A DNA stretch of 64,000 nucleotides from Malacoraja senta (taxonomy: Eukaryota). Shown here piece by piece: positions 23,940 through 63,227 of this stretch; positions within the stretch are counted from its first letter, which is position 1, and every line of letters starts with the position of its first letter. The stretch spans positions 1 to 64,000 of the forward strand of contig JAXLNO010003607.1 in NCBI GenBank assembly GCA_038087875.1, in the 5' to 3' direction. The notes below the pieces were generated by a model that had not been told where the DNA came from, did not search any database, and saw only the letters and a program-made list of their open reading frames with translations. The translations under genes were made by a program, and so were the position numbers.

Positions 23940-24260
23940 GGCCCCTCACCCCCTCAATGTTCCTAAATCCCTCAGCATCGTCTGTCCCGCAGTTCCTCGC
24001 TGCCCCTCATCACCTTAGCGTGCCTCATTCCCTCAGTGTCCTCATTCCCTCGGCATCCACCAGACACTCAATGAGCAGCGGTCCCTCATCCCCTGAGTCC
24101 CTCAACATCGGTCAGTGTCCGGTGCTCCCTCAATGACCCTCAGTCTGGCAGTCCCTCAGTGACCAACTGACCCTCAGTGTCCTTCATTCCCTCAGTGACC
24201 AATGGTCCCTCAAAATCTTCCTCAAGTGTCCCTCGTCTCCCTCATTTCCCTCAGTGTCCG
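23940..24260. repeat. Degenerate CCCTCA(GT/TC) pyrimidine-rich repeat
   Basis: Many ccctcagtg/cctcatt-like units directly upstream of the CpG-rich segment. Confidence 0.7.
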
Positions 24261-24339
24261 GCTTGGCGCCAGTGGGGGGGGGCGGTGTCACGCGGGCTCG
24301 TCCTTGGCGCGCTGAAGTTTGACGGGTTTGACGGACAGC

Positions 24340-24475
24340 GGTCTCCGCCAATCGGATGGACTGTCCACCCCATGGACCAACGCCGTGGCCGGAACGAGGT
24401 CCAATGGTCAGCGAGGGGGGCGGGACATGGCGGTGTCTATAAAAGGCGCCGCTGTCCAGGCAGCGTCCGCAGTGG
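24340..24475 (+). promoter_or_regulatory. CpG-rich Pol II promoter of histone-gene type
   Basis: CCAAT 24348-24352, CCAAC 24377-24381, CCAAT 24401-24405, GC box GGGGCGGG 24417-24424, TATAAAA 24438-24444, Inr-like GCAGT with A at 24471. Confidence 0.7.
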
Positions 24476-24630
24476 CCGGAGAAGAACCTCGACGCGCGCC
24501 CCCACCAGGGATCCTTCAAGACACAATCCATCGCTCTGGTCATCCCACTGGTCAGCGAGGCTTCACTGGCCGGACCAGGTCTGCGTTCCGGACACGACCA
24601 ACGGTCAAGGCCAAAGACATCGCCCCTCAC
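24472..24630 (+). pseudogene. Histone H3 pseudogene with a large internal deletion
   Basis: Frameshifted pieces FKTQSIAL..SEASLAG, DQVC and RPTVKAKDI match H3 FQSSAVMAL..SEAYLVG, DTNLC and RVTIMPKDI. Confidence 0.6.
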
Positions 24631-24785
24631 CCCCAATTTAATAAAATATCCTCTCAGGGGTCACTCCTTCCTTCCCACCCGCCCTGTCCACGCACCGACG
24701 GGTCGAGTCCCCTTGAGGAGCGAGCGGTGAGTATGAAGGGGGGTGAGGGCGGGGAGTCTCTTTCCTGTGTCATTCTGCTCCATTG

Positions 24786-24975
24786 ATGGTGTTCGCGGTT
24801 ACACTCACCGGCGCTAAGTCCCCGCAAGTCCAGCTACGCACAAACATCTGCAGGTCATGTTGGCTCCGAGTAGATCCAGCGACCGGCCTTGAAGACGATG
24901 GCGTGGGAGACCGCGACCGAGATGTGCTTCCAGACCGAGATCTTGTCGGAGATCGGTGAGGTTCAGTCTCTTCGG
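24786..24975 (+). pseudogene. Histone H2B-like fragment running into an H3-like fragment
   Basis: KS/RKSSYA, NICR...RVDPATGL and KTM match H2B RSRKESYS, YVYK..QVHPDTGI and KAM. Then WETA-TEMCFQT matches H3 REIA..TDLRFQS. Confidence 0.65.
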
Positions 24976-25084
24976 TAAGAAGAAAAAGAGTTGGAGGAAC
25001 TCAGCGGGTCAGGCAGCATCTGTGGAGGGAATGGACAGACGACGTTTTGGATCGTGACCCTTCAAGACTCCATTCTAGTCTCCA

Positions 25085-25385
25085 TTTAACAGGTCAGTTT
25101 CCGACGACAGCAGGTACCAGAGGTTGATGGTCACCATGGGCTGGAATGACACATCGTTGAAGATCCCAAAGATCAATCTTGCTCCAAGTTCTCTGTGACC
25201 TCCCACACCTGGCGCTGGAGAAGCTGTTGAGGAACAACTTGGTGGGACTTCTTGTCGCCCTGGATCTCCTCCAGATGGTGTGAAGGGGAAAGCATGAAAC
25301 ATCTGCCGACTGATGTGGTTGCCAGCTGTTTGCGAGGAACTTTCCCTCCAAAGACTTGCAGGAAAATGCCACTGGGGCAGATGAT
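25085..25385 (-). pseudogene. Histone H3 pseudogene, left arm of inverted repeat 1
   Basis: Minus strand CKS-GGKVPRKQLATT matches RKSTGGKAPRKQLATK. Further pieces: LEEIQ, TKLFL, LQRQVWEV, SETDL. Confidence 0.8.
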
Positions 25386-25814
25386 GAGTCAGAGCCAGAC
25401 GAGTTTGACAAATTTCATAAACAATCTGTGCAACCCCAAGAGGGATTGGATAGCATGCAACAAAAGCCTTTCACTGTACCTCAGTACACATGACAATATA
25501 AATTAAAGTAAACTAAACTAAATGAATCTAAACTAAATTAATCTAAACTTAACTAAAACATAAAATAAACGTCAGGAACTCGAGCGCCGTTCGTGTAAAA
25601 CCATCGGATTTAAAGCCACATCGGTGGGGACCACACCGGAATTTCTCACTCTGTCCAACAAAGGCCCTAAAAGCGCCACTAGCCACCCCGCCTGCGCTCT
25701 CACCTGTATTTGGGAGTTCTTCGTCAACATTTCCCAATACAACAGGCAGCGATTTGTTGCACATGAGAATCCATGGCGTTTAAGAAATTTGTCAAACTCG
25801 TCTGGCTCTGACTC

Positions 25815-26112
25815 ATCATTTGCCCCAGTGACATTTTCCTGCAGGTCTTCGTAGGGAAAGTTCCTCATAAACAGCTGGCGACCACAACAGTCGGCAGATA
25901 TTTCATGTTTTCCCCTTCACACTGTCTGGAGGAGAACTGGGGCCACAAGAAATCCCACCAACTTGTTCCTCAACAGCTTCTCCAGTGCCAGATGTGGACG
26001 GTCATGCAGAATGTGGAGCAAGATTGGCCTTTGGGATCTTCAACCATGTGTTATTCCAGTCCATGGTGACCATCAACCTCTGCTGTCGTCGTTAACTGAC
26101 CTGGTGAATGGA
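25815..26112 (+). pseudogene. Histone H3 pseudogene, right arm of inverted repeat 1
   Basis: GKVPHKQLATT at about 25855-25890; reverse complement of 25085-25385. Confidence 0.8.
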
Positions 26113-26419
26113 GACTAGAATGGAGTCCTGAAGGGCCATGATTCAAAACATCATCTGTCCATTCCCTCCACATATGTTGCCTGACCCGCTGAGTTCCTCC
26201 AGCTGTTTTTCTTCTGACCGATGAGATTGAGCCTCGATGATCTGTTTCGGAGCCACAAAAAGTTGTTCCTCAACAGCTGCTCCACATGTGGAAGTTTGCT
26301 TCAAACTTGGAGAAAGATTGGCCTTCTTGCAAAGGCTTTTGATTCTGTCCCCAGACGTGGCTCTACCAGGTATTGGAGATGATTGGATGTCCACCACGTC
26401 TTCTAAACCTCACTCAGTC

Positions 26420-26497
26420 CTTCCACAAGAACATGCATCTACAGTGCAATTTGATGGCGCTACTTCGGACAGTTTCCCCATGAGTAGTGGAGTGAAT
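26420..26497 (+). mobile_element. RTE-clade LINE RT fragment; continues at 32050-32190
   Basis: TVQFDGATSDSFPMSSGV|KEGCVPAP...EGAYLHTRSD.NLF.LA.LKAKTKV; the GVKQG motif is split by CR1 insertions. Confidence 0.75.
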
Positions 26498-29400
26498 TGG
26501 GAGTATAAAGATAGAGTTAAAGGGAAAGCAAGTACCGGAAAAGTTACAAAAGACTCCCGACTTAATGGGAAGGAAAGTTTGAGAAGGGATAAGAGAGTAA
26601 GGTCAGAGCCAATAGTGACCGGTGTGAGAGGGGAGATGAATACCGAAGTTAAAGTGTTCTATATTAATGCACGAAATATAAGAAACAAAGTGGACGAGCT
26701 TGAGGCTCAGTTAGAAATTGGCAAGTATGATGTGGGAACAACAGAGACATGGCTGCAAAAGGAGCAGGGCTGGGAACTGAATATTCAAGGGTATAGGTCC
26801 TATCAAAAAGACAGGCAGAGGGGTTGGGGTAGCTCTGTTGCTGAGGAATGAAATTCAGTCCCTTGCGAGGGGTGACATAGAATCAGGAGATGTAGTCAGT
26901 ATGGATAGAACTGAAGAATTGTAAGGGTAAAAATACCCTAATGGGACTTATCTGCAGGCCCCCTTGGATATAGGGTGCAAATTGAATCAAGAGTTAAAAT
27001 TGCCATGTCATAAAGGTAATACTATGTTATGGGAGATTTCAACATGCAGGTAGACTGGGAAAATCAGGTTGGTACTGGACCCCAAGAAAGGGAGTTTGTG
27101 GAGTGCCTCCGTGATGGATTCTTAGAGCAGCTTGTATTGGAGCCTACCAGGGAGAAGGCAATTCTGGATTTAGTGTTGTATAATGAACCGGATTTGATAA
27201 GGGAACTCAAGGTAAAGGAGCCATTAGGAGGTAGTGACAATAATATGATCAGTTTTAATCTACAAGTTGAGAGGGAGAAGGGTAAATCGGAGGTGTCAGT
27301 ATTACAGTTGAATAAAGGGGACTATGGAGCCATGAGGGAGGAGCTGGCCAAAGTTGACTGGAAAGATACCCAAGCAGGGATGACAGTGGAACAACAATGG
27401 CAGGTATTTCTGCGAATAATATAGGTGCAGGAGCAGTTCATTCCAAATATGAAGAAAGATTCCAAAGGGAGTAAGGGGCGACCGTGGCTGACAAGGGAAG
27501 TCAGGAACATTATAAAAATAAAATAGGTATAACATAGCAAAGATGAGTGGGAAGCCATAGGATTGGTTAACGTTTAAAGAGCAACAGAAGATAACTAAAA
27601 AGGCAATACGGGGAGAAAAGATGAGGTATGAAAGTAAGCTAGCCAAGAATAGAAAGGATGATAGTAAAAGCTTCTTTAGGAATGTGAAGAGGAAGAAAAT
27701 AGTTAAGACCAAAGTTGGACCCTTGAAGACTGAAAAGGGTGAATTTATTATGGGCAACAAGGAAATGGCAGATGAGTTGAACAGGTACTTTGGATCCGTC
27801 TTCACTAAGGAAGACACAAACAATCTTCCTGAAGTACTAGTGGCCAGAGGATCTAGGGCGACTGTGGAACTGAAGGAAATCCACATTAGGCAGGAAATGG
27901 TGTTGGATAGACTGATGGGAATGAAGGCTGATAAATCCCCAGGCCTGATGGTCTGTATCCCAGGGTACTTAAGGAAGTGGCTCTAGAAATTGTGGATGCA
28001 TCGGTGATAATTTTCCAATGTTCTATAGATTCAGGATCAGCTCCTGTGGATTGGAGGGTAGCTAATGTTATCCCAATTTTTAAGAAAGACGGGAGAAAGA
28101 AAACGGAATTATAGACCAGTTAGCCTGACATCGGTGGTGGGGAAGATGCTGGAGTCAATTATAAAAAGATGAAATAGCGGCACATTTGGATAGCAGTACA
28201 GGGCCTGTCCCACTTTGCGATTTTTTTTGGCGACTGCGAGCGTCAATGACTGACGCCCGTAAAACCGTCAAGTTGTACAACATACACACTGACGTATGCT
28301 GTCCTGTGGGTGATGCCCGGTTAGGGTTAGGGACCACAGATGGGCTATAAAATATTCTTCCTTCAATGCATGATTTTAAACATTAATATATTAAAATTAA
28401 TGCAATATAATCAATTGTGCAAATGAAAAGATGCCTGAGTCGTTCAGTTTTATTTACAGATGTATTGGTCCGCTTACAGAGCCAATCACCTTCTCTAACT
28501 ATTCATAGGGATGGATTCAGTGAGTGTAGACTGAACTCCCCTCTCCATTCCACCCCCATCTTCCCCCTCCCGCTCTCTCCCTCCTTGTCTACTACCCCCC
28601 CTACCCTTCTCCCCTCTCCCCCCTTCTTTCCTTCCCCCCTCTTCCTCCCTTCTCCCCGCTCCACTCTCTCCCCTTCTTCCCTCCCCCCCTCTTCCTCCCT
28701 TCTCCCCACTCCACTCTCTCCCCCTTCTCCCCTCACATCCCCATCTCCCTCCCTTCTCCCATTCTCCAACCCCCCTCCCCCCCAGGTTCCCCGATGCCCC
28801 CCATTTGTGGACCCAGCCTGCGACCAGCGAATACCCGCATACTATCCCACACATGCTAGGGACAATTTATACAAACCGTAACCCTAGCCATAACTCTTAA
28901 CTCTAACTCTAACCATAACCCTAACCCCAGCCCTAACGCTAACCCTAACTCTAGGTTAATAGGCTTGGTATACATATAAATTGTCCCAAGCATGTGTGGG
29001 ATAGTATGCGGGGGATCGCTGGTCGGTGCGGACTTGATGGTCCGAAAGGCACTGTATCTCTGAACTAAATGTGATACAGGGGCCCCAGGGATTGGACTCA
29101 AACCCCCAATGTTCTGCCTGCTCATGGGAACTAAACTGTTGACCACGAGTTGTCCCAGAGGCAGATCTCTCTTCCAATGGTCTCTCCAAACCTCCAGAGG
29201 CAGTGGGCTTTTCAACTGGGTACAGGCAATGTTGTCAATGTACCAGTGCCACCCACCTGCTCCCGCCACTGGGTCTAAATACCCACCACCCATTTTGAAG
29301 CAAGGTGAGGGGGCGGGGAGGTGGGGGGTTGTTACCAAAGTCTGCATTTATCCCATAGTCAATGTCACTAAAACAGATGATGTGGCCTTTGCTGGGGGGG

Positions 29401-30757
29401 GGGGGGGGCGGTTGGAGAATGGGAGAAGGGAGGGAGAGGGGAGAAGGGTAGGGGGGTGGTTAGTGAAGAAGGAGGGATGGTGCAGGAGGGGGGAGAGGAT
29501 AGTTCAGTCTTCACTCACTGAATCCATCCTTGTGAAAAGTTAGAGATGGTGATTGGATCTGGAAGCCGACCAATACATCTGTAAATAAAACTGAACGACT
29601 CAGGCATCTTTTCATTTGCACAATTGATTTCATTGTATCAATTTTAATATATTAATATTTAAAACCCATGCATTGATGGAAGAATATTATACAGCCCATC
29701 TGTGGTCCCTAACCCTAACCAGCGTCACCCGCAGGACAGCAAACGTCAGCGTGTGACAGGGCGCACGATGTGATGAGACACCCAGAGACATTCCAAAATC
29801 CAGGGGCGACAGTGAGACACCGCGTCACTACATGCATCACACCAAGTCACGACCCAACCACGAAGCGACAACTTCTTTTCAGGCTGTCGCCCAAGTGGGA
29901 CTGGCCCTAAACAGGATCGGTCCGAGTACGGCATGGATTTACAAAGGGGAAATCATGCTTAACTAATCTTCGGGAATTGTTGAGGATGTAACTAAGAAAA
30001 TGGACAAGGGAGAGCCAGTGGATGTAGTGTACCTGGACTTTCACAAAGAATTCAATAAGGTCCCACATAGGAGATTAGTGGGCAAAATTAGGGCACATGG
30101 TTTTGGGGTAGAGTGCTGACATGGATACAAAATTGGTTGGCGGGCAGGAAACAAGGAGTAGGGATTAACGGGTCCCTTTCAGAATGGCAGGCAGTGACTA
30201 GTGGGGTACCGCAAGGCTTGGTGCTGGGACCGCAGCTATTTACAATATATTTATTAATGATTTAGGTGAAGGGATTACGTAACATTAGCAAATTTGCAGA
30301 TGACACAAAGCTGGGTGGCAGTGTGAACTGTGAGGAGGATACTATGAGACTGCAGGGTGACTTGGATAGGGGTGAATGGGCAGATGCATGGCAGATGCAG
30401 TTTAATGTGGATAAATGTGAGGTTATCCACTTTGGTAGCATAAACAGGAAGGCAGATTATTATCTGATTGGTGTCAGGTTGGGAAAAGGGGAAGTACAAC
30501 GGGATCTGGGGGTTCTTGTTCATCAGTCAATGAAACTAAGCGTGCAGGTACAGCCGGCAGTGAAGAAAGCGAATGGCATGTTGGCCTTTATAACAAGAGG
30601 AATCGAGTATAAGGAGCAAAGAGGTCCTTCTGCAGTTGTACAGAGCCCTAGTGTGACCACATCTGGAGTATTGTGTGCAGATTTGATCTCCAAATTGGAG
30701 GAAGGACATTCTTGCTATTGTGGGAGTGCAGCATAGGTTCACAAGGTTAATTCCCGG
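26498..30757 (+). mobile_element. Decayed CR1 LINE ORF2 (endonuclease through RT), interrupted at 28200-29908
   Basis: [31 protein letters not shown], with multiple stops and frameshifts. Confidence 0.9.
28200..29908. mobile_element. PIF/Harbinger-like non-autonomous element with long internal inverted repeats
   Basis: TIRs AGGGCCTGTCCCACTT and AAGTGGGACTGGCCCT (15/16 match). Flanks TAC and AAA fit a decayed TAA target in CR1 GATAGCAG-TAA-CAGGATC. Confidence 0.75.
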
Positions 30758-33269: not shown

Positions 33270-34500
33270 TCTCAGTTCATAGATGTGGTTTGTGTCGGGC
33301 AGTGTTCAAGAGCCTGATGATTGCTGGGATCAAGCTGTTCCTGAACCTGGAGGTCACGTTTTTTGGGCTTCTGAACAAAATAATGGGAGCTTAGTGCAAT
33401 AACACACAGATAACTAATAAAATAAAAATACAGGAAATTAATAATTGAATGCTAGTGTAAAAAATATCTGTCGGGCAGCAAAAGACGCAGTCCATAATAT
33501 CTCATCGTTGTGGTTCATGTTGTGCAGCGTTCGAGAGGCTTGTAATTGCTGGGAAGAAGCTGCTCTTAAACATGGAGGTCAAGTTCTCTGCTTCTGTGGG
33601 GTTTTCTGTGGTAGGGTGGTGTGGGTCTTTGATATTAGCTGCCTTCTGCAGGTAGCATCTCCTGCAGAGCCCTTTGATGGTGAAGAGATCATCACCTGTG
33701 ACGGACTGAGCCGTTTCTGCGTAACACACGCGTAACACCAACATCGTCACACTGTACAAGAACAAGGGAATGCACCAACTACTGTTCTATTTAATTATTT
33801 AATTGTCATATGTACAGGCAACAGAACCGTTAAATTATTTCTTGCTGTAGATTAACAAACCTGTAATTGCAACAACACAAAAATGCATTAATCAAAATGT
33901 CAGTAAATTAATCGTCTTGATACCAGTGTAAATATTGTCTGTAAAGCAACTTAAGCCTCAGTCTGTAGTTCTTCATTGTTCATAGTTGTGGTTAGTGTTG
34001 GGCAATGCTTACGAGCCTGATGGTTGCTGGGAAGAAGCTGCTCCTGAACCAGGAGGTTATGTTTTTTAAGGTACAGAACCTTGTTGCAAATGGTAGGACT
34101 GAAATATCGAGAGTGTGGTCAGGATGGTGTGGGTCTTTGACATTAGCTACCTTTTGGATGCAGCATCTCCTGTAGATCGCTTTGATGGTGGGGAGATCAT
34201 TACCTGTGATGCACTGAGCAGTTTCTACCACTCTGTATTCTTCTTCATTCCTGGGAGTTTGAATTGCTGAACCAGGCTGCAGTGCAACCAGTCAGTGTGC
34301 TCTCTCCCATACAACTGTCCAAGTTCAACAGAGTATTCATCAACATGCCGAATCTCCTCAATCTTCTGAACAAGTAGAGGTGATGATGAGTCTTGTATGT
34401 GATTGCATTGATGTGCTGGACCCAGGACAGATCTTCAGAGACATGGACAACCAGGAACTTGCAACATAACATTCTCCACCACTGCCCCATGAATGAAGAC
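33270..34500 (-). mobile_element. Rex1/Babar-like LINE remnants; duplicated at about 37110-37980
   Basis: KFLVVHVSEDLSW..HINAI..K.H..LY.FRRLRRFG, ESTLTGC..AWF and RSSFFPATIRL. Confidence 0.7.
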
Positions 34501-34560
34501 AAGTTTGTGGATCATCGGTTTTCCCCTCCTGAGGTGATCGACCTCTGCCATGTTTCCTGT

Positions 34561-34750
34561 GATTGACCAGATGACAATATCTGATGAGATGGCCATGGAC
34601 CAGGGCTGGCACGCAGAAGCTTTATCACACCTGACCCTGCTGTGTTCCTGAGGAAGATCTGGTGTCACTGGGAATATGGAGCTGATCCTCTATAAACTGC
34701 CCTCAATGGAAGACCATGATGAAGGTGCATCTATAGAGCTCGGCTGTCAG
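34561..34750 (+). pseudogene. Histone H3 fragment (module B); copies at 36127, 38037, 39600 and 41630
   Basis: GTQK.HHT*P, VFLRKIWCH, ELILYKLP and *SSAV match GVKKPHRYRP, VALREIRRY, ELLIRKLP and QSSAV. R to W/C changes fit CpG decay. Confidence 0.75.
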
Positions 34751-34864
34751 CGAAGTTGGAACAGAAATCTGCTGGAGCAACTCAGTGGGTCAGGCAACAT
34801 CTGTGGAGGGAATGGACAGACGATGTTTGAATCCGGACCCACCAAGACTCCATTCTTGTCTCCA

Positions 34865-35520
34865 TTTACCAGGTTGGATTATGATGGCATGAAATGGCCA
34901 AGATTGATGATCACTGTGGACTGGAGTGACAGATGACTGAAGATCCTGAAGACCCAATCTTGCTCCACGGTCTGCGACCTTCCACACCTGGAACTGGAGA
35001 AGTTGTTGAGGAACAACTTGGTGGGATTTCTTGTGGCCCTGGATCTACTCCAGATTGTTTGAAGGGACAAATGTGACAGATGTCTGAGTGCCAGCGATTG
35101 GCCGAGGACGGGCCCTCGGTGGGTGCCGGAGGTCGGTCGAGTATGTGGCGCCGAGAGAACATGGCATCTGGGGAGGGAATGGGCAGATGACGTTTGGATC
35201 AGGATCCTTCAAGACTCCATTCTTGTCTCCATTTACCAGGTCACTTTCTGACGACATGAAATGGGCAAGTTTAATGATCACAGTGGACTTGAATGACTGA
35301 ACCTTGAAGATCCCAAAGGCCAATCTTACTCAACGTTCTACGCGACCTTCCACACCTGGCATTGTTGAGGAACAACTTGGTGGGACATCTTGTCGCCCCG
35401 GATATCCTCCAGACAGTGTGAAGGGGAACATCTGCTGACTGATGAGGTCGTCAGCTGTTTGCGAGGAACTTTCTCGCCGAAGACTTGCATGAAAATGCCA
35501 CTGGGGCAGATGATGAGTCA
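34865..35520 (-). pseudogene. Two antisense H3 pseudogene fragments (34865-35055, 35230-35520); duplicated at +3476
   Basis: Same module as 25085-25385; minus strand EKVPRKQLTT near 35480-35450. Confidence 0.75.
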
Positions 35521-35609
35521 GAGCTGGACGAGTTAGACATATTTCTTAAACGGCGTGGATTCTCCCGTGCAACCTCAACAGGGATTGGATAGCACGCAAC
35601 AGAAGCGAT

Positions 35610-35732
35610 GTCAGGAACCCGAGTGCCGTTCGTGGAAAACCATCGGATATGAAGCCACATCGGTGAGGACCGCACCGGAATTTCTCACTCCGTCCAACAA
35701 AGGCCCTTTTAAGAGCCACTAGAAAAAGAGCT
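35610..35732 (+). promoter_or_regulatory. H3 C-terminal remnant followed by a histone mRNA 3' stem-loop and U7 downstream element
   Basis: NPSAVRGK/PSDM resembles NLCAIHAK/PKDI. Then AAA-GGCCCT-TTTA-AGAGCC-ACT (35702-35717, one C-A mismatch) and AAAAAGAGCT (35723-35732). Confidence 0.85.
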
Positions 35733-35869
35733 ACAACCTCTTCCCCACCTGCGCTCTCATCTGCATTTGAGATTTCATCGTCAACATTTCCCAGTACAAC
35801 TGGCAGCGATCAGTTGCACGGAGGAATCCACGCCTTTTAAGAAATTTGTCAAACACATCTGGCTCTGAC

Positions 35870-36120
35870 TCATCATCTGCCCCAGTAGCATTTTCCTGCA
35901 CGTCTTCAGAGGGAAAGGTCCTCACAAATAGCTGGCGACCACATCAGACGGCAGAAGTTTAATGTTTTCCACTTCATACCTTCTGGAGGAGATCCAGGCC
36001 CACAAGAGGTCCCACCAAGTTGTTCCTCAAAAGCTTCTCAAGCGCCAGGTGTGGAAGGTCATGGAGAACTTGGAGTAAGATGCCATTCAAGTCCACGGTG
36101 ATCATCGACCTCCGCCACGT
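35870..36120 (+). pseudogene. Histone H3 pseudogene, right arm of inverted repeat 2; duplicated at 39346-39596
   Basis: GKGPHK*LATT, LEEIQ, TKLFLK, KRQVWKV and FKSTVIIDL. Confidence 0.75.
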
Positions 36121-36399
36121 TCCTGAGATTGACCAGATGACAATATCTGATGAGATGGCCATGGACCAGGGCTGGCACGCAGAAGCTTTATCACACCTGA
36201 CCCTGCTGTGTTCCTGAGGAAGATCTGGTGTCACTGGGAATATGGAGCTGATCCTCTATAAACTGCCCTCAATGGAAGACCATGATGAAGGTGCATCTAT
36301 AGAGCTCGGCTGTCAGCGAAGTTGGAACAGAAATCTGCTGGAGCAACTCAGTGGGTCAGGCAACATCTGTGGAGGGAATGGACAGACGATGTTTGCAAT

Positions 36400-36689: not shown

Positions 36690-37109
36690 GTGTAACACCA
36701 ACATCGTCACACTGCACAAGGACAAGGGAGATCACAGCAAGTGCACCAACTACAAGGGACATCTCACTTCTGAGTGTTACAGGAAAGGCCTTTGCCAGAG
36801 TGATCCTACAAAGACTGCACAGACTCGCTGACCTGAGGCACAATGCGGTTTCCATGGAGATAGATCCACAATGGACATGATCTTCTCCCTGCGTCAAATC
36901 CAAGAAAAATGTCAAGAGCAGCAAACCCCATTGTTCATCGCCTTTGTGGATGTTACGAAAGCTTTTGATTCTGTCAGCAGACATGGCCTCTACCACCTAC
37001 TGGAGAAGATTAGATGTCCACCACGTCTTCTAAACCTCTCTTGGTCCTTCCATGAGAACATGCATCTACAGTAGTGGAAATTGATGAAGCTACATCGGAT
37101 AGTTTCCAC
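36690..37109 (+). mobile_element. RTE-clade LINE RT remnant; longer copy at 40035-40985 and a piece at 42505-42800
   Basis: IVTLHKDKGD....NY, ISLLSVTGKAFARV, DMIFSLRQIQEKC.EQ..PLFIAFVDVTKAFD and ADDAAL. Confidence 0.85.
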
Positions 37110-39177
37110 ATTAGCTGCCTTCTGCAGGTAGCATCTCCTGCAGAGCCCTTTGATGGTGAAGAGATCATCACCTGTGACGGACTGAGCCGTTTCTGCGTAA
37201 CACACGCGTAACACCAACATCGTCACACTGTACAAGAACAAGGGAATGCACCAACTACTGTTCTATTTAATTATTTAATTGTCATATGTACAGGCAACAG
37301 AACCGTTAAATTATTTCTTGCTGTAGATTAACAAACCTGTAATTGCAACAACACAAAAATGCATTAATCAAAATGTCAGTAAATTAATCGTCTTGATACC
37401 AGTGTAAATATTGTCTGTAAAGCAACTTAAGCCTCAGTCTGTAGTTCTTCATGGTTCATAGTTGTGGTTAGTGTTGGGCAATGCTTACGAGCCTGATGGT
37501 TGCTGGGAAGAAGCTGCTCCTGAACCAGGAGGTTATGTTTTTTAAGGTACAGAACCTTGTTGCAAATGGTAGGACTGAAATATCGAGAGTGTGGTCAGGA
37601 TGGTGTGGGTCTTTGACATTAGCTACCTTTTGGATGCAGCATCTCCTGTAGATCGCTTTGATGGTGGGGAGATCATTACCTGTGATGCACTGAGCAGTTT
37701 CTACCACTCTGTATTCTTCTTCATTCCTGGGAGTTTGAATTGCTGAACCAGGCTGCAGTGCAACCAGTCAGTGTGCTCTCTCCCATACAACTGTCCAAGT
37801 TCAACAGAGTATTCATCAACATGCCGAATCTCCTCAATCTTCTGAACAAGTAGAGGTGATGATGAGTCTTGTATGTGATTGCATTGATGTGCTGGACCCA
37901 GGACAGATCTTCAGAGACATGGACAACCAGGAACTTGCAACATAACATTCTCCACCACTGCCCCATGAATGAAGACAAGTTTGTGGATCATCGGTTTTCC
38001 CCTCCTGAGGTGATCGACCTCTGCCATGTTTCCTGTGATTGACCAGATGACAATATCTGATGAGATGGCCATGGACCAGGGCTGGCACGCAGAAGCTTTA
38101 TCACACCTGACCCTGCTGTGTTCCTGAGGAAGATCTGGTGTCACTGGGAATATGGAGCTGATCCTCTATAAACTGCCCTCAATGGAAGACCATGATGAAG
38201 GTGCATCTATAGAGCTCGGCTGTCAGCGAAGTTGGAACAGAAATCTGCTGGAGCAACTCAGTGGGTCAGGCAACATCTGTGGAGGGAATGGACAGACGAT
38301 GTTTGAATCCGGACCCACCAAGACTCCATTCTTGTCTCCATTTACCAGGTTGGATTATGATGGCAGGAAATGGCCAAGATTGATGATCACTGTGGACTGG
38401 AGTGACAGATGACTGAAGATCCTGAAGACCCAATCTTGCTCCACGGTCTGCGACCTTCCACACCTGGAACTGGAGAAGTTGTTGATGAACAACTTGGTGG
38501 GATTTCTTGTGGCCCTGGATCTACTCCAGATTGTTTGAAGGGACAAATGTGACAGATGTCTGAGTGCCAGCGATTGGCCGAGGACGGGCCCTCGGTGGGT
38601 GCCGGAGGTCGGTCGAGTATGTGGCGCCGAGAGAACATGGCATCTGGGGAGGGAATGGGCAGATGACGTTTGGATCAGGATCCTTCAAGACTCCATTCTT
38701 GTCTCCATTTACCAGGTCACTTTCTGACGACATGAAATGGGCAAGTTTAATGATCACAGTGGACTTGAATGACTGAACCTTGAAGATCCCAAAGGCCAAT
38801 CTTACTCAACGTTCTACGCGACCTTCCACACCTGGCATTGTTGAGGAACAACTTGGTGGGACATCTTGTCGCCCCGGATATCCTCCAGACAGTGTGAAGG
38901 GGAACATCTGCTGACTGATGAGGTCGTCAGCTGTTTGCGAGGAACTTTCTCGCCGAAGACTTGCATGAAAATGCCACTGGGGCAGATGATGAGTCAGAGC
39001 TGGACGAGTTAGACATATTTCTTAAAGGGCGTGGATTCTCCCGTGCAACCTCAACAGGGATTGGATAGCACGCAACAGAAGCTATGTCAGGAACCCGAGT
39101 GCCGTTCGTGGAAAACCATCGGATATGAAGCCACATCGGTGAGGACCGCACCGGAATTTCTCACTCCGTCCAACAAA

Positions 39178-39208
39178 GGCCCTTTTAAGAGCCACTAGAA
39201 AAAGAGCT
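39178..39208 (+). promoter_or_regulatory. Second copy of the histone stem-loop + U7 element
   Basis: Identical to 35702-35732 at offset 3476. Confidence 0.85.
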
Positions 39209-41934
39209 ACAACCTCTTCCCCACCTGCGCTCTCATCTGCATTTGAGATTTCATCGTCAACATTTCCCAGTACAACTGGCAGCGATCAGTTGCACGGAGG
39301 AATCCACGCCTTTTAAGAAATTTGTCAAACACATCTGGCTCTGACTCATCATCTGCCCCAGTAGCAGTTTCCTGCAAGTCTTCAGAGGGAAAGGTCCTCA
39401 CAAATAGCTGGCGACCACATCAGACAGCAGAAGTTTAATGTTTTCCACTTCATACCTTCTGGGGGAGATCCAGGCCCACAAGAGGTCCCACCAAGTTGTT
39501 CCTCAAAAGCTTCTCAAGCGCCAGGTGTGGAAGGTCATGGAGAACTTGGAGTAAGATGCCATTCAAGTCCACGGTGATCATCGACCTCCGCCACGTTCCT
39601 GAGATTGACCAGAGGACAAGATCTGAAGGGACGGCCACGGACCAGGGGTGGCACGCAGAAGCTTCATCACACCTGACCCTGCTGTGTTGCTGAGGGAACC
39701 TCCCGGTGAGCGCCGCACAGCCGTGCTGGAGCCGACCCAGCAATCGGCACGGAGCCGGTCAAGACCAGACTCGGCCGGCGGTGACCGCAAACAAGGAAGA
39801 GCCCGGCAGCCAAAGTGTCTGTGGAGAACGAGGGTCAAAGACGGGCCCGCGTTGGGTGCCGGAGGTCGGTCGAGGACGTGCTGCCGAGAAGGAAGAGGGA
39901 CCATCGGGACCACATTGGTCACTCATCACCCCAACAGAAGAAGGACTTCAGGGGCTGATGGACAGACTGTCTCAAGCTCGCAACAAAGACCGACTGACAA
40001 TCATCAGAGAGACGGTGGTGTCCCTCAACACATGTGTAACACCAACATCGTCACACTGCACAAGGACAAGGGAGATCACAGCAAGTGCACCAACTACAAG
40101 GGACATCTCACTTCTGAGTGTTACAGGAAAGGCCTTTGCCAGAGTGATCCTACAAAGACTGCACAGACTCGCTGACCTGAGGCACAATGCGGTTTCCATG
40201 GAGATAGATCCACAATGGACATGATCTTCTCCCTGCGTCAAATCCAAGAAAAATGTCAAGAGCAGCAAACCCCATTGTTCATCGCCTTTGTGGATGTTAC
40301 GAAAGCTTTTGATTCTGTCAGCAGACATGGCCTCTACCACCTACTGGAGAAGATTAGATGTCCACCACGTCTTCTAAACCTCTCTTGGTCCTTCCATGAG
40401 AACATGCATCTACAGTGGAAATTGATGAAGCTACATCGGATAGTTTCCACATGAGAAGTGGAGTGAAGCAAGGCTGTGACCCAACTCCCATGGTGTTTGG
40501 CATCTTCCTATCTGCCCTTTGCCTTCCCAACATACACGGGAGACGTGTATCTTCAAACCAGAAGTGACGGGATGCTCTTCAATGTGGCAATGTTGAAAGC
40601 CAAGACGAAGGTGAGAACTGTGCTTATAAGGGAACTCCAGCCCGCTGATGATGCTGCACTCAGTTCCTCAACAGAAGAAGGACTTCAGGGGCTGATGGAC
40701 AGACTGTCTCATGCTTGCACCAAAGACCGACTGGCAATCAGCATTAAGATGACTGTTGTCATGGATCAGGGCACTCCACTCCCCTCTGAAATCACCCTAA
40801 ACACCACTACGCTGGAAAATGTCTTAAATTCACCAACCTAGGATCTACGGTGACTGACAGCCACTCTCTGGATGAGGAAACCAATTCACGTACAGTAACC
40901 CACCTTCGAGAGACTAAGCAAGTGGACATGGAAGAACAGGAAACTCACAATGAAGACCAAGGTAACTGTCTACAACGGAGACAGTTTTTATTTTTTTATT
41001 CTGCTTATATGTTTTGTAATCTGCTTATCTGCAAGGCATCCTTGAGAGTCTTTGAAAGGTGCCCATAAGTGTAATGATAAATAAAAAATAAAAAAATAAA
41101 AATCAATGAAGTCAAGTTTGTGGATCTGCGGCTTTCTCCTGAGGTCAACAAATAGCTCTGTGGTTCTGCAGACATTGAGAACAAAACGTCTGCACTGGCA
41201 GCATTTCCTCTCAATCTCTCTCCTGTACTCTGACTCGTCATTACCCATTATTTGTCCAACAACGGTGGTATCGTCGGTGAAATTTAAAGATGGCTTTGGA
41301 ATGGTCTGGCTGTGCAGTCCTGGTCATAGAGCAGGGGAGTGAACACACAGCCTTGAGCTGGTCATGTGTTGGTTATAGAGGAGGAGGTGTTGCCCGTTTG
41401 TGCTGATTGTGGTCTGCTGATGAGGAAATTGAAGATCCTTTTGTACAGGATTGAGCAGAGACAAGGTTAAGGAGATGTGTGAGGACATCCAGGACAGATT
41501 TTCAGAGACATGGACACGCAGGAACTTGCAACATAATGTTCTCCACCACTGCCCCATGAATGAAAACAAGTTTGTGGATCATCGACTTTCCCCTCCTGAG
41601 GTCATCGACCTCTGCTGTGTTTCTTGTGATTGACCAGAGGACAATATCTGAAGAGACGGCCATGGACCAGGGCTGGCACGCAGAAGCATCATCACACCTG
41701 ACCCTGCTGTGTTGCTGAGGAAGATCTGGTGTCACTGGGAATGTGGAGCTGATCCTCTGTAAACTGCCCTCAGTGGAAGACCATGATAGAGATGTGTTTT
41801 TAGAGCTCGGCTGTCAGCGAAGGAGGAGCAGAAAACTGCTGGAGGAACTCAGCGGGTCAGGCAGCATCTGCGGAGGAAATGGACATATGACATTTGGATC
41901 GAGACCCTTCAAGAATCCATTCTTGTCTCCATTT

Positions 41935-42125
41935 ACCAGGTCAGTTTCTGATGACAGGAAATGGCCAAGATTGACCATCATCATGGACTTGCATGTCAGA
42001 TGCTTGAAGATACTGAAGACCCAATCTTGCTCCACGTGCTCTGCGAACTTCCACACCTGGCGCTGGAGAAGCTGTTGAGGAACAACTTGGTGGGATTTCT
42101 TAGGGTGCTGGATCTCCTCCAGATT
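41935..42125 (-). pseudogene. Antisense H3 pseudogene fragment
   Basis: ORF 41814-42182(-) contains LEEIQHPKKS...LQRQVWKFAE...SETDLVN. Confidence 0.7.
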
Positions 42126-43434
42126 GATTGAAGGTGGGTGCCAGAGGTCGGTCGAAGACACGACTCCGAGAGGACTTTTCATCTGTGGAGGGATTGGACA
42201 GACAACGGTTTGGATCAGGAACCTTCAAGATTCCATTCTTGTCTCCATTTACCAGGTCGGTTTCTGATGACAGGAAATGGCCAAGATTAATGATCACCGT
42301 GGACTTGAATGACAGAAAATTGAAGCCGCTCAAGACCGGACTCGGCCCGCAATGGCCACGAACAAGGACAAACCCGGCAGCCGAAGTGACCGCCGAGACA
42401 AGTGTCCAGTACGGGCCCTCGGTAGGTGCCCGAGGCCAGACTGCTCATGGAATGACGCGCCGCTGAGAAGGAAGAGGAACCATCGGGACCATATTGGTCA
42501 CTCATCACCCCAACAGAAGAAGGACTTCAGGGGTTGATGGACAAACTGTCTCCTGCTTGCAATGATTACCGATTGGCAATCAGTATTAAGACGACTGTTG
42601 TCATGGACCAAGACACTCCACTCCTCTCTAAAATCATCCTAAACACCAGTCAGGTGGAAACTGTCATCAAATTCACCTACCTAGGATCAACGTTGACTGA
42701 CTGCCACTCTGTGGACGAGGAAATCAATTCACCTACAGCAAACCACCTTCCTATACAGTAACCACATTCTGGAGTATATCCAAGCAGACATGGAAGAACA
42801 GGAGTAACAATGTCCTATTGGCAGCATTCCCTCAGATTATCAATCTCTCTCCTGTACTCTGTCTGACTCGTCATTACCCATTATTTGTCCAACAATGGTG
42901 GTACCGTCGATGAAATTTAAAGACGGCATTGGAATGGTCTGGCTGTGCAGTCCTGGTCATAGAGCAGGGGACTGAACACACAGCCTTGAGCTGGTCCTGT
43001 GTTGGTTATAGAGGAGGGGGTGTTGCCAGTTTGTGCTGAGCTGGAGGCCTTGCTCGAGACTGACATTGAGCCCCACCGCAGGGTCGTGGACTTACCATCG
43101 GAGCCTGCGATCCCTTGCCTGTGATCGACACTCCAACTGTGGGTTTCAACATCAAGGAGCTCGCAATCTCAGGTAGAAACTGATGTCAGGAAGGTCCAAA
43201 GTCGCAGGAGGTTCGACCAGCCCCAACCCGGGGTCTGATCGCCTGACGCGGGGGAGCTGAGATCCCCCCGATGCAGGAGCTTGATCGCCCCAACGCGGAG
43301 GGCCAGACCGCTGGCTACGGGAGCCAAGATCGCCCCGTCAACTGAAGTCTCGAGGACCCCGATTGCAGGAGAACAAAGAAGGGAAGAGATTGAACTTTTT
43401 CTAGGGTGATCATCAGCCTCTGATTGACCTGAGA

Positions 43435-43750
43435 TTGACCATAGGACAAGATCTGAAGAGATGGCCATGTACCAAGGGAAACATGTAGAAGCATCATCGC
43501 TCCTGACTCATCTGTGTTCCTGAGGACAATGTGGTGCTGCTAGGAATAGACTGAGCTGCTTCTCCGCTGAACTGCCTTCCAGTCCCTGGTATGGGACATC
43601 GCTCGGGACTTCAGGTAAGACCTTTACTTGGGTATCCTTCCTCTGCAATTCCCTACGAGATAGACCTTACAAACAGTTGTAGAACACTCACTGGCAGCAT
43701 ATTCATGGCTCCCGATCTCTCACTGTCTGAAGCAGCTCCTGTGCCACCAA
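43435..43750 (+). pseudogene. Most complete histone H3 pseudogene in the window
   Basis: 43511-43630 translates without gaps to SVFLRTMWCC*E*TELLLR*TAFQSLVWDIARDFR*DLYL versus H3 [40 protein letters not shown] (18/40 identical). Downstream *NTHWQHIHGSR resembles EDTNLCAIHAKR. Confidence 0.88.
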
Positions 43751-45179: not shown

Positions 45180-45365
45180 CAATGGGCTTTGGGATCTTCA
45201 GCATTGCCCTGCCCTTCAAGTCCATGGCTGATGATCTACCTCCAACATTTTGCTGCACAGTGCCAGAGGGAAAAATCGAGTAGAAGCCCATTGAAGCCTC
45301 GTCACTACGGACTGCAACCTGTTCCAAAGAGAGAGATCAGATGTCACCAGAAACCCACTGTAACC
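45180..45365 (+). pseudogene. Distal H3 fragment
   Basis: KPRHYGLQPVPKREIRCHQKPT matches [22 protein letters not shown]. It is preceded by the same gggatcttca...ttcaagtcca module as the other copies. Confidence 0.7.
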
Positions 45366-54834: not shown

Positions 54835-55050
54835 GATGTGTAGGAAGGAACTGCAGTTGCTGGTTTAAACCAAAGATAGACACAAAAAGCTGGAGGAACT
54901 CAGCGGGTCAGGCAGCACCTCTGGAGAAAAGGAATAGGTGACGTTTCAGGTCGAGACCCTTCTTCTGAAGAAGACCCAAAACGTCACCTATTCCGTTCCT
55001 CCAGAGATGTTGTCTGACTCACTGAGTTACTCTAGCTTTTTGTGTCTACC
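54835..55050. repeat. Palindromic Penelope-type repeat
   Basis: The two halves are reverse complements around cttcttctgaagaag. Confidence 0.75.
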
Positions 55051-63045: not shown

Positions 63046-63227
63046 GAAGGTACACAAAAATGCTGGAGAAACTCAGCGGGTGCAGCAGCATCTATGGAGC
63101 GAAGGAAATAGGCAACGTTTCGGGCCGAAACCCTTCTTCAGACTTCGGCCCGAAACGTTGCCTATTTCTTTCGCTCCATAGATGCTGCTGCACCCGCTGA
63201 GTTTCTCCAGCATTTTTGTGTACCTTC
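63046..63227. repeat. Near-perfect palindrome (84-bp arms, 14-nt spacer) of a Penelope-type repeat
   Basis: 63046-63129 is the reverse complement of 63144-63227 with one mismatch seen. It sits inside a CR1 fragment. Confidence 0.9.

What the first reader, a model, noticed from the sequence alone, without database searches (positions are those of the whole stretch)
24950..26243. ~470-bp inverted repeat of head-to-head H3 pseudogenes ~0.5 kb downstream of a promoter (candidate long hairpin RNA)
Seen: 24950-25422 is the reverse complement of 25778-26243, colinear with mostly transition differences, around a ~355-nt loop. Each arm is a decayed H3 gene plus a Penelope-type fragment. A + strand transcript from the promoter at ~24471 would fold into a long imperfect duplex. 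Known: pseudogene-derived inverted repeats yield endo-siRNAs in mouse oocytes, and hpRNAs do so in Drosophila; long duplexes are also ADAR substrates. Inference: candidate source of H3-related small RNAs. The large divergence from canonical H3 limits targeting of real histone mRNA, so targets may be sister copies or a variant gene.
Basis: partly seen in the sequence, partly recalled or inferred. Interest (0 to 1): 0.75.

Follow-up and report, generated by a model that had tools for sequence, protein, structure and literature searches.

The report
Decaying hairpin of histone H3 pseudogenes
Two broken copies of a histone H3 gene lie head-to-head next to a promoter-like CpG island and could fold into a long RNA hairpin, but the two arms have decayed independently, so this is most likely a genomic fossil and not a small-RNA gene.

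Summary
24950-25422 is the reverse complement of 25778-26243: 411 of 473 columns pair, there is one 7-bp indel, and 37 of the 55 mismatches are transitions. The spacer is 355 nt.

Each arm has an inner, truncated, frame-broken H3 copy (aa ~12-90) and an outer piece of a very high-copy Penelope-type repeat with a dead hammerhead core. H3 support: BLASTP E 3e-07, hhalign 86%, tblastn E 0.002 in the window.

The same arm-spacer-arm unit recurs at 35164-36081 and 38640-39557. There the spacer keeps a sub-threshold histone 3' stem-loop plus a U7 site.

Either strand would fold (-871 and -865 kcal/mol). No selection on the duplex is visible:
- The four arms of hairpins A and B are equidistant (82-86%).
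- There is no excess of arm-arm co-variation (4 of 14 informative sites).
- The G:U excess on the + strand (25 vs 12, p 0.047) follows a C>T/A>G mutation asymmetry and is absent from the sister hairpins.

No public RNA run covers the locus, so transcription, small RNAs and editing are untested. No intact relative exists to serve as a target.

Verdict: a real but ordinary, neutrally decaying inverted duplication inside a shattered H3 array.

The parts
24260..24975 (+). Unique CpG island with a promoter-like set on the + strand: CCAAT at 24348 and 24402, GC box at 24415-24424, TATAAAA at 24438-24444. It ends at the left edge of the hairpin.
   Evidence: GC 0.62, CpG o/e 0.90 against a window mean of 0.38. 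Motifs read. No other copy in the window. Low read depth, so single copy.
24640..24645 (+). AATAAA between the promoter and the hairpin. GT donor-like sites at 24729 and 24958.
   Evidence: Use of these signals is untested.
24950..25075 (-). Left arm, outer part: fragment of a very high-copy Penelope-type repeat. Its hammerhead sense is on the - strand and the core is mutated (CTTGAAGG...AAAAC).
   Evidence: 37 family hits in the window, 5 with the CTGAAGA...GAAAC-GTC core. Word depth about 2-7 x 10^5 in four runs. No Rfam hammerhead hit.
25076..25388 (-). Left arm, inner part: H3 pseudogene, sense on the - strand. H3 aa 13-90 map to 25349-25152. It carries stops, a frameshift and an 11-12 codon deletion.
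   Evidence: tblastn E 0.002, H3 HMM i-E 0.053, BLASTP E 3e-07, profile against PDB with all top hits H3 and best E 0.029.
25389..25434 (-). Left arm, innermost part: 5' flank of the H3 copy. It has a 10-bp deletion relative to the right arm.
   Evidence: Alignments.
25435..25755 (+). Spacer (asymmetric part). It includes an A-specific ~100-nt tail of a high-copy retroposon (25468-25569). It also holds a decayed histone stem-loop (25663-25677); the U7-binding element after it has been deleted.
   Evidence: Alignment with spacers B and C. Depth 3 x 10^4 to 1.4 x 10^5 at 25405-25511. No Rfam hit in A. CpG o/e 0.83.
25756..25811 (+). Right arm, innermost part: 5' flank of the H3 copy.
25812..26117 (+). 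Right arm, inner part: H3 pseudogene, sense on the + strand (aa 14-23 at 25854-25883). 87-89% identical to the reverse complement of the left arm.
26118..26243 (+). Right arm, outer part: the same Penelope-type repeat fragment, hammerhead sense on the + strand, core mutated (CTGAAGG...AAAAC).
   Evidence: Depth 6-35 x 10^3.
26251..26325 (+). A third, 75-nt fragment of the same H3-like family, fused to a CR1-like reverse-transcriptase fragment (26326-26480).
   Evidence: Repeats I3, I4 and D7, blastn, alignment row A_3.
35164..36081 (+). Sister hairpin B: left arm 35164-35572, spacer 35573-35805, right arm 35806-36081. The spacer holds a histone stem-loop plus a U7-binding site at 35697-35741 (+).
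   Evidence: blastn about 80% to A including the spacer. RF00032 21.2 bits (gathering score 34), E 0.0026 in 601 nt.
38640..39557 (+). Sister hairpin C, a 99.3% copy of B made by a recent 3476-bp tandem duplication.

Best explanation
This is a fossil inverted duplication inside a shattered histone H3 array, not a maintained RNA gene.

Origin. An H3 gene copy was truncated at about codon 90-115 against the hammerhead end of a Penelope-type repeat. That junction is shared by all copies, so it came first (shown). The block [H3 5' flank - H3 5' two-thirds - repeat] was then copied in inverted orientation across a ~230-nt turn-around spacer that carries the 3' stem-loop and U7 site of a histone gene (shown). 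The copying was most likely a fold-back or template-switch event (inferred). The orientation, with the hammerhead ends of the repeat facing the apex, matches the small inverted pairs of this repeat elsewhere in the window. Almost at once the unit was duplicated locally to give hairpins A and B. C arose recently from B.

History since. All arms have since decayed independently, by CpG loss, stops, frameshifts and indels, at an apparently neutral pace.

Present state. Hairpin A happens to abut an unmethylated-looking CpG island with a canonical TATA promoter on the + strand. If that promoter reads through (about 40%, inferred), the RNA would fold into a ~470-bp, 87%-paired duplex. In a vertebrate such a duplex is more likely a substrate for A-to-I editing than for efficient dicing. 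That outcome would be a by-product and not a selected function.
For: The inverted repeat and its H3 and repeat content.

The same H3-repeat junction in all six copies that reach it, and the recurrence of arm-spacer-arm with a homologous spacer.

Star-like relationship of the four arms: 81.6-86.2% over 283 shared columns. Informative sites split 7 (by side), 4 (by hairpin) and 3, and the test for an excess of the by-hairpin class gives p 0.74. So there is no gene conversion or compensatory change that keeps the arms paired.

Arms have background CpG o/e (0.37-0.47) and no open frame. Both strands fold equally well, -871.2 and -865.2 kcal/mol.

The wobble excess in A (25 vs 12) equals the polarised + strand spectrum: C>T 16, G>A 6, A>G 8, T>C 4. 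Hairpins B and C show 12-13 vs 13.

Where related runs differ from the window inside the arms, five of the six listed changes show them with the better-paired state. Three of those sites are only G:U against Watson-Crick, one change breaks a pair, and orthology is unconfirmed. So decay in this lineage is suggested, not shown.

The H3-like part is low-copy by depth, so it is not a mobile family. No protein in 5.8 billion shares three 5-residue words with the family.

Small inverted pairs of the repeat with hammerhead ends at the apex: 54884-55041 and 63056-63217.
Against: No RNA data could be examined, so absence of function is inferred from sequence evolution alone, with only 14 informative sites.

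The hairpin directly abuts a CpG island that looks like an active promoter. The mutation asymmetry in A (24 vs 10, p 0.024) is in the direction expected if the + strand is the non-template strand of a germline transcript, so the locus may well be transcribed.

Five perfectly paired runs of 21-36 bp remain, enough for Dicer products. Several 21-mers are shared with sister copies.

The spacer keeps twice the CpG density of the arms (p 0.005), which neutral decay does not explain.

A young hairpin-RNA gene need not yet show covariation.
Confidence: 0.7

Rival explanations
1. Functional hairpin-RNA locus. The CpG-island promoter drives a + strand transcript through both arms. Dicer cuts the duplex into endo-siRNAs that silence sister H3-derived copies or an H3-like gene.
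For: Promoter-like CpG island 0.5 kb upstream. Stable hairpin. Perfect duplex runs of 36, 24, 23, 22 and 21 bp, and 21-mers shared with sister copies. G:U over A:C bias on the + strand, 25 vs 12, p 0.047.
Against: No arm-arm covariation. The bias is absent in B and C and is explained by the mutation spectrum. The - strand folds equally well. AATAAA at 24640 and two donor-like sites lie before the hairpin. No intact relative as a target. The arms are about 31% identical to H3 protein, so real H3 mRNA cannot be targeted. In mammals, full-length Dicer processes long dsRNA poorly outside mouse oocytes (PMC11239679). No RNA run holds the locus.
Confidence: 0.07
2. Incidental long dsRNA. The hairpin lies in a primary transcript or intron started at the CpG island. 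There it forms dsRNA that is hyper-edited by ADAR or sensed as dsRNA, with no sequence-specific role. Inverted Alu pairs in human transcripts behave this way.
For: The CpG island abuts the hairpin. A possible first coding exon has an ATG at 24898 in good context and a GT donor at 24958, which would put the hairpin in an intron. The + strand C>T/A>G excess of 24 vs 10 (p 0.024) is the direction of transcription-associated asymmetry.
Against: Transcription is not shown. The asymmetry is one marginal test among several, and A against B is not significant (Fisher p 0.19). The putative exon has no recognisable homologue.
Confidence: 0.2
3. The arms are not H3-derived but come from something else, for example the N-terminal part of a LINE reverse transcriptase, and the H3 resemblance is chance.
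For: Pfam finds no histone domain in any frame. phmmer of the right arm finds no H3. A 75-nt arm-like piece is fused to a CR1-like RT fragment at 26326.
Against: Colinear match of the left arm to H3 aa 13-90: tblastn E 0.002, BLASTP E 3e-07, hhalign 86%. All 60 listed matches of two profiles against 177,635 PDB sequences are H3. In an H3-HMM scan of the window, six of the seven best hits lie in this repeat family and the best is a separate H3 fragment in the same 24.8-45.4 kb cluster. There is a histone stem-loop plus U7 site in the sister spacers. No RT domain appears in any frame.
Confidence: 0.04
4. Assembly artefact: a false fold-back join.
For: Palindromes are a known failure mode of long-read assembly. 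The inner arm-spacer junctions are not bridged by 31 nt or more on both sides in the contig pieces listed.
Against: The arms differ at 13% of positions and by indels. The same architecture is present three times. Independent contigs bridge both outer boundaries: record 18 at 24881-25038 and record 22 at 26082-26557.
Confidence: 0.01

Closest known systems
Pseudogene-derived endo-siRNA sources in mouse oocytes (Tam et al. 2008 and Watanabe et al. 2008, as cited in PMC11239679) and natural inverted repeats such as the Optn 3' IR (PMC11239679)
   Same: An inverted duplication of a dead gene copy that, if transcribed, gives a long intramolecular duplex.
   Different: Those loci have sequenced 21-23-nt RNAs, a Dicer isoform able to cut long dsRNA, and parental mRNAs with near-perfect complementarity. 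Here no RNA has been seen, no intact parental-like gene matches, and the arms are about 31% identical to H3 protein.
Drosophila hpRNA genes (Okamura et al. 2008; Czech et al. 2008; from my own knowledge, not re-read here)
   Same: A long hairpin with arms of several hundred nt derived from a gene fragment, lying next to a promoter.
   Different: hpRNA arms co-evolve with each other and with their target genes. Here covariation was tested and not found.
Minimal type I hammerhead repeats of Penelope-like elements, dispersed in thousands of copies in metazoan genomes (Cervera and de la Pena 2014, as summarised in PMC7761336)
   Same: The outer 90-120 nt of each arm belongs to a very high-copy repeat whose better copies carry CUGANGA - short helix - GAAAC - GUC. 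Copies often sit as inverted pairs.
   Different: Both cores in the arms are mutated and no Rfam hammerhead hit is obtained. The apex of this pair holds 1.1 kb of histone-derived DNA instead of a few nucleotides.
Inverted duplications inside vertebrate histone gene clusters (chicken; D'Andrea et al. 1985; from my own knowledge)
   Same: Histone genes duplicated in inverted orientation within a cluster.
   Different: Those are intact, expressed genes. Here the duplicated unit was already truncated and fused to a retroelement fragment when it was copied.
Inverted Alu pairs in human transcripts as ADAR substrates (from my own knowledge)
   Same: The most likely fate of the RNA if it is made: an imperfect long duplex in a primary transcript.
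   Different: No editing data exist for this locus.

Membership tests
hpRNA / endo-siRNA-producing inverted-repeat locus | Long inverted repeat that folds into an extended intramolecular duplex | tested here: met
   MFE -871.2 kcal/mol on the + strand and -865.2 on the - strand. 87% paired over ~470 bp. Perfect runs of 36, 24, 23, 22 and 21 bp.
hpRNA / endo-siRNA-producing inverted-repeat locus | A single transcript spanning both arms | not testable with these tools
   Runs labelled 'RNA?' behaved as low-coverage DNA contigs. No RNA run holds the locus.
hpRNA / endo-siRNA-producing inverted-repeat locus | 21-23-nt small RNAs from both arms with a Dicer signature | not testable with these tools
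   No small-RNA data were reachable.
hpRNA / endo-siRNA-producing inverted-repeat locus | A target gene with extended complementarity | tested here: not met
   No protein shares three 5-residue words with the family. No intact ORF in any copy. Only decayed sister copies share 21-mers. Only this window and a protein database were searched, not the whole genome.
hpRNA / endo-siRNA-producing inverted-repeat locus | Arms evolve together (compensatory change or homogenisation) | tested here: not met
   Informative sites: 4 by hairpin against 7 and 3 for the other splits. A_L-A_R identity is 85.5%, no higher than the cross-hairpin pairs at 81.6-86.2%.
Replication-dependent histone H3 gene (here as a pseudogene) | Sequence homologous to H3 along its length | tested here: met
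   aa 13-90 colinear. tblastn E 0.002 in the window, BLASTP E 3e-07, hhalign 86%, and all listed PDB profile matches are H3. Nothing is detectable beyond about aa 95.
Replication-dependent histone H3 gene (here as a pseudogene) | 3' stem-loop followed by a U7-binding (HDE) element | tested here: inconclusive
   In sister spacers B and C: RF00032 21.2 bits against a gathering score of 34, E 0.0026 locally and 0.28 window-wide, followed by AAAAAGAGCT. In hairpin A the loop is mutated and the HDE deleted. The element sits in the spacer and not after either arm, and the coding sequence it once served is not recognisable.
Replication-dependent histone H3 gene (here as a pseudogene) | Intact 136-codon reading frame | tested here: not met
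   Stops, frameshifts, an 11-12 codon deletion and truncation in every copy.
Penelope-like element hammerhead repeat | Minimal type I hammerhead core (CUGANGA ... GAAA ... cleavage triplet) | tested here: inconclusive
   The pattern is present in 5 of 37 family copies in the window and mutated in both arms. No Rfam hammerhead hit at the gathering score or at E up to 2. Rfam models may not cover helix-III-less variants (PMC7761336).
Penelope-like element hammerhead repeat | Association with a PLE reverse transcriptase / GIY-YIG gene | not tested
   Not looked for.

The most novel reading that the evidence does not exclude
Penelope-type hammerhead hairpin repeats in this skate-like genome capture host gene pieces at their apex and copy them as mirror images, creating long gene-derived hairpins. 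This one landed beside a live germline promoter and is transcribed. It yields small RNAs or edited dsRNA directed at the H3-derived repeat family. That would be a vertebrate counterpart of the birth of hpRNA genes.
Probability: 0.06. Interest if true: 0.65.

Novelty: new member of a known kind. Interest (0 to 1): 0.3.

Why it matters
If the hairpin were expressed and diced, it would be a rare vertebrate hpRNA outside rodent oocytes and a view of how such genes arise from retroelement-mediated fold-back copying. As the evidence stands it matters less. It is a well-resolved example of how a histone cluster is shattered, and of how a Penelope-type repeat sits at the ends of a large palindrome. 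It also shows that a G:U-over-A:C bias in a genomic hairpin can come from strand-asymmetric mutation and so cannot by itself show selection on an RNA. The adjoining CpG island and the CpG-rich spacer are the two features still worth an experiment.

Tried and rejected
1. I first read the arms as a LINE reverse-transcriptase N-terminus. No Pfam domain appears in any frame and H3 is the only family recovered, so I rejected this.

2. By eye, the left part of the spacer and the segment after the right arm of hairpin B (36080-36330) looked like H3 3' ends. Smith-Waterman against shuffles gave z 0.6. PDB phmmer found no histone. The H3 HMM gives nothing beyond aa ~95 near the hairpins. Rejected.

3. 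A 'dead H3' directly behind the promoter: no H3 by phmmer for 24472-24783 or 24874-24960. The only hit is a weak tblastn match at 24807-24887 (E 0.45). Left open.

4. RNA evidence: both run searches returned only runs that behave as DNA contigs.

5. Rfam: no hammerhead, and the stem-loop scores below the gathering score.

6. ESM Atlas on the left-arm frame and on the flanking ORF: nothing.

7. Protein database search with the longest in-frame copy: no relative.

8. Exact-product look-ups of two local ORFs: none on record.

9. MITE or DNA-transposon reading: no shared termini among copies, no TA duplication, and low copy number by depth.

10. I did not translate a majority consensus of the arms for a database search, because a typed consensus has no reference.

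Full report
**Observation**

The repeat finder returns two colinear inverted blocks: 25118-25422 / 25778-26082 (305 nt, 89%) and 24950-25113 / 26080-26243 (164 nt, 87%). They are offset by one 7-nt indel. A global alignment has 411 matches, 55 mismatches (37 transitions, 18 transversions) and 7 gap columns. The spacer is 355 nt. Comparison with paralogous copies shows that the repeat originally ran inward to GTGCAAC (25428-25434 / 25756-25762). The left arm later lost 10 bp there, and the spacer of this copy gained about 100 nt of a high-copy retroposon tail at 25468-25569.

**What the arms are**

My first impression was a LINE reverse-transcriptase fragment. Pfam found nothing in any frame. 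H3 emerged in four steps.
- phmmer of the left-arm frame against PDB sequences listed almost only H3 chains, at E 0.4-1.3.
- Profiles built from in-frame pieces of several copies gave H3 as all 60 listed matches, best E 0.11 and then 0.029, colinear over aa 13-93.
- To test this against real genes I fetched H3 loci from metagenome contigs with a degenerate pattern for KAPRKQLATKAARK. This gave 66 intact 136-codon ORFs, 20 of them with one identical 136-residue H3 sequence.
- With one of these, tblastn against the window gives E 0.002 for the left arm (aa 13-90 at 25349-25152, 31% identity). BLASTP of the left-arm frame gives E 3e-07, and hhalign of the profile gives 86% probability.

In an H3-HMM scan of the six-frame window, six of the seven best hits fall in this repeat family. 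The best hit is a separate H3 fragment at 43511-43627 in the same 24.8-45.4 kb cluster.

The right arm reads H3 in sense on the + strand and the left arm on the - strand, so the copies are head-to-head. All copies carry stops, frameshifts and an 11-12 codon deletion. Nothing beyond about aa 95 is recognisable.

The outer 90-120 nt of each arm belongs to a dispersed repeat. It has 37 hits in the window and word depths of 10^5 in four public runs. Five window copies keep CTGAAGA-(short helix)-GAAAC-GTC. This is the minimal type I hammerhead described for Penelope-like elements (PMC7761336). Both arm copies have it mutated, and Rfam reports no hammerhead.

**Context**

The arm-spacer-arm unit is not unique. 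It recurs at 35164-36081 (hairpin B) and 38640-39557 (hairpin C), at about 80% identity to A and with a homologous spacer. C is a 99.3% copy of B produced by a 3476-bp tandem duplication. Single arms lie at 34773-35066, 38249-38542, 41832-42134 and 42180-42325, and a 75-nt piece at 26251-26325.

In B and C the spacer holds GGCCCTTTTAAGAGCC followed by AAAAAGAGCT on the + strand. Rfam scores this as a histone 3' stem-loop at 21.2 bits, below the gathering score of 34, with E 0.0026 in a 601-nt search and 0.28 window-wide. In hairpin A the loop is mutated and the U7 site deleted. I could not identify the coding sequence this signal once served.

The H3-like part has low read depth, so the family is local and low-copy, not a mobile element. 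The junction between H3 and the hammerhead end of the repeat is identical in all six copies that reach it. The unit was therefore already a truncated pseudogene when it was copied in mirror image.

Small inverted pairs of the same repeat lie at 54884-55041 and 63056-63217, with their hammerhead ends at the apex. That is the same orientation as the big hairpin. Earlier notes of this scan describe fold-back copying of host DNA at such apices elsewhere in this genome. I use that as a lead for the origin, not as evidence.

**Does it behave like an RNA gene?**

- *Folding.* Both strands fold into one long hairpin, at -871.2 kcal/mol (+) and -865.2 kcal/mol (-). Energy gives no strand preference.
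- *Wobble pairs.* On a + strand RNA, 25 mismatches are G:U and 12 are A:C (p 0.047). Polarising the differences with the other copies shows why. The + strand changes are C>T 16, G>A 6, A>G 8 and T>C 4, that is 24 against 10 (p 0.024). A strand-asymmetric mutation spectrum of this direction is what germline transcription of the + strand would produce, and it creates G:U pairs automatically. It needs no selection on structure. Hairpins B and C show 12-13 against 13.
- *Co-evolution.* Over 283 columns shared by the four arms of A and B, all six pairs are 81.6-86.2% identical. Informative sites split 7 (by side), 4 (by hairpin) and 3. There is no excess of sites where the two arms of one hairpin changed together (p 0.74). 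This is the pattern of a near-simultaneous origin followed by independent decay.
- *Direction of change.* Six differences between related public runs and the window are listed inside the arms. In five of them the relatives carry the better-paired state, and in three of those five the window still has a G:U pair. One change breaks a pair. Orthology of those contigs is not confirmed, so decay in the window's lineage is a hint only.
- *Targets.* No intact relative of the family is found. No protein among 5.8 billion shares three 5-residue words with it. Real H3 mRNA is far too different. Only sister pseudogene copies share 21-mers.

**Promoter**

24260-24975 is a genuine CpG island: GC 0.62 and CpG o/e 0.90, against 0.38 for the window and 0.37-0.47 for the arms. 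It carries two CCAAT boxes, a GC box and TATAAAA on the + strand, and it ends at the hairpin's edge. Between the TATA box and the hairpin lie AATAAA (24640) and two donor-like GT sites (24729, 24958). An ATG at 24898 in good context could start a short exon, which would put the hairpin in an intron. None of this could be tested. The runs offered as 'RNA?' behave as low-coverage DNA contigs, and no RNA run holds the locus.

**Verdict**

The functional reading has no support from the tests that could be run, and the evolutionary tests point to neutral decay. I put:
- 0.70 on a fossil inverted duplication;
- 0.20 on incidental transcription into an edited or otherwise inert dsRNA;
- 0.07 on a working small-RNA locus.

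In mammals, full-length Dicer handles long dsRNA poorly outside mouse oocytes (PMC11239679), which lowers the prior for the last option.

One observation is left unexplained: the spacers keep about twice the CpG density of the arms (30 of 510 against 33 of 1132 positions, p 0.005).

The organism was not identified here. Another note of the scan calls the genome skate-like.

Noticed in passing
window 43511-43627 (+) and 45291-45362 (+): Further H3 fragments outside the hairpin family. The first is the best preserved in the window: H3 aa 46-84, 60% identity, hmmsearch i-E 8.6e-05. The second is weaker (tblastn E 0.6, hmmsearch i-E 5.7). The first supports a shattered H3 array between about 24.8 and 45.4 kb.
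   Followed up: partly
window 33634-36219 and 37110-39695: A 99.3% identical tandem duplication with a period of 3476 bp, carrying hairpin B into hairpin C. It is much younger than the hairpins themselves.
   Followed up: partly
window 54884-55041 and 63056-63217: Small inverted pairs of the Penelope-type hammerhead repeat with 10-13 nt between the arms. The second gives sub-threshold miRNA-like Rfam hits (mir-722, MIR1507).
   Followed up: partly
window 25435-25755 and 35573-35805: The hairpin spacers keep about twice the CpG density of the arms (Fisher p 0.005), and 9 of 21 CpG sites are shared between A and B. This could be a remnant of an unmethylated promoter region. It is unexplained.
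   Followed up: partly
window 23944-24274: An 18-nt minisatellite (TCCCTCAGTGACCAACTG-like, about 10 or more units) inside the CpG island upstream of the promoter motifs.
   Followed up: no
window 24807-24887 (+): A weak H3 N-tail-like stretch (TGAKSPQVQLRT...PATG against H3 aa 12-34, tblastn E 0.45) between the promoter and the hairpin. phmmer of an overlapping frame found nothing. It may be the 'dead H3' of another note.
   Followed up: partly
window 26326-26480, 36690-37110, 40302-40451; about 26480 onward: CR1-like reverse-transcriptase fragments (…LAKAFDSV…) flank the hairpin units. A younger high-copy LINE with an endonuclease domain begins at about 26480.
   Followed up: no
window 28284-28627 / 29424-29754: Another inverted repeat, about 345 nt and 84% identical, around a proline/serine-rich low-complexity stretch. 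It gives a sub-threshold MIR7533 Rfam hit at 28817-29032.
   Followed up: no
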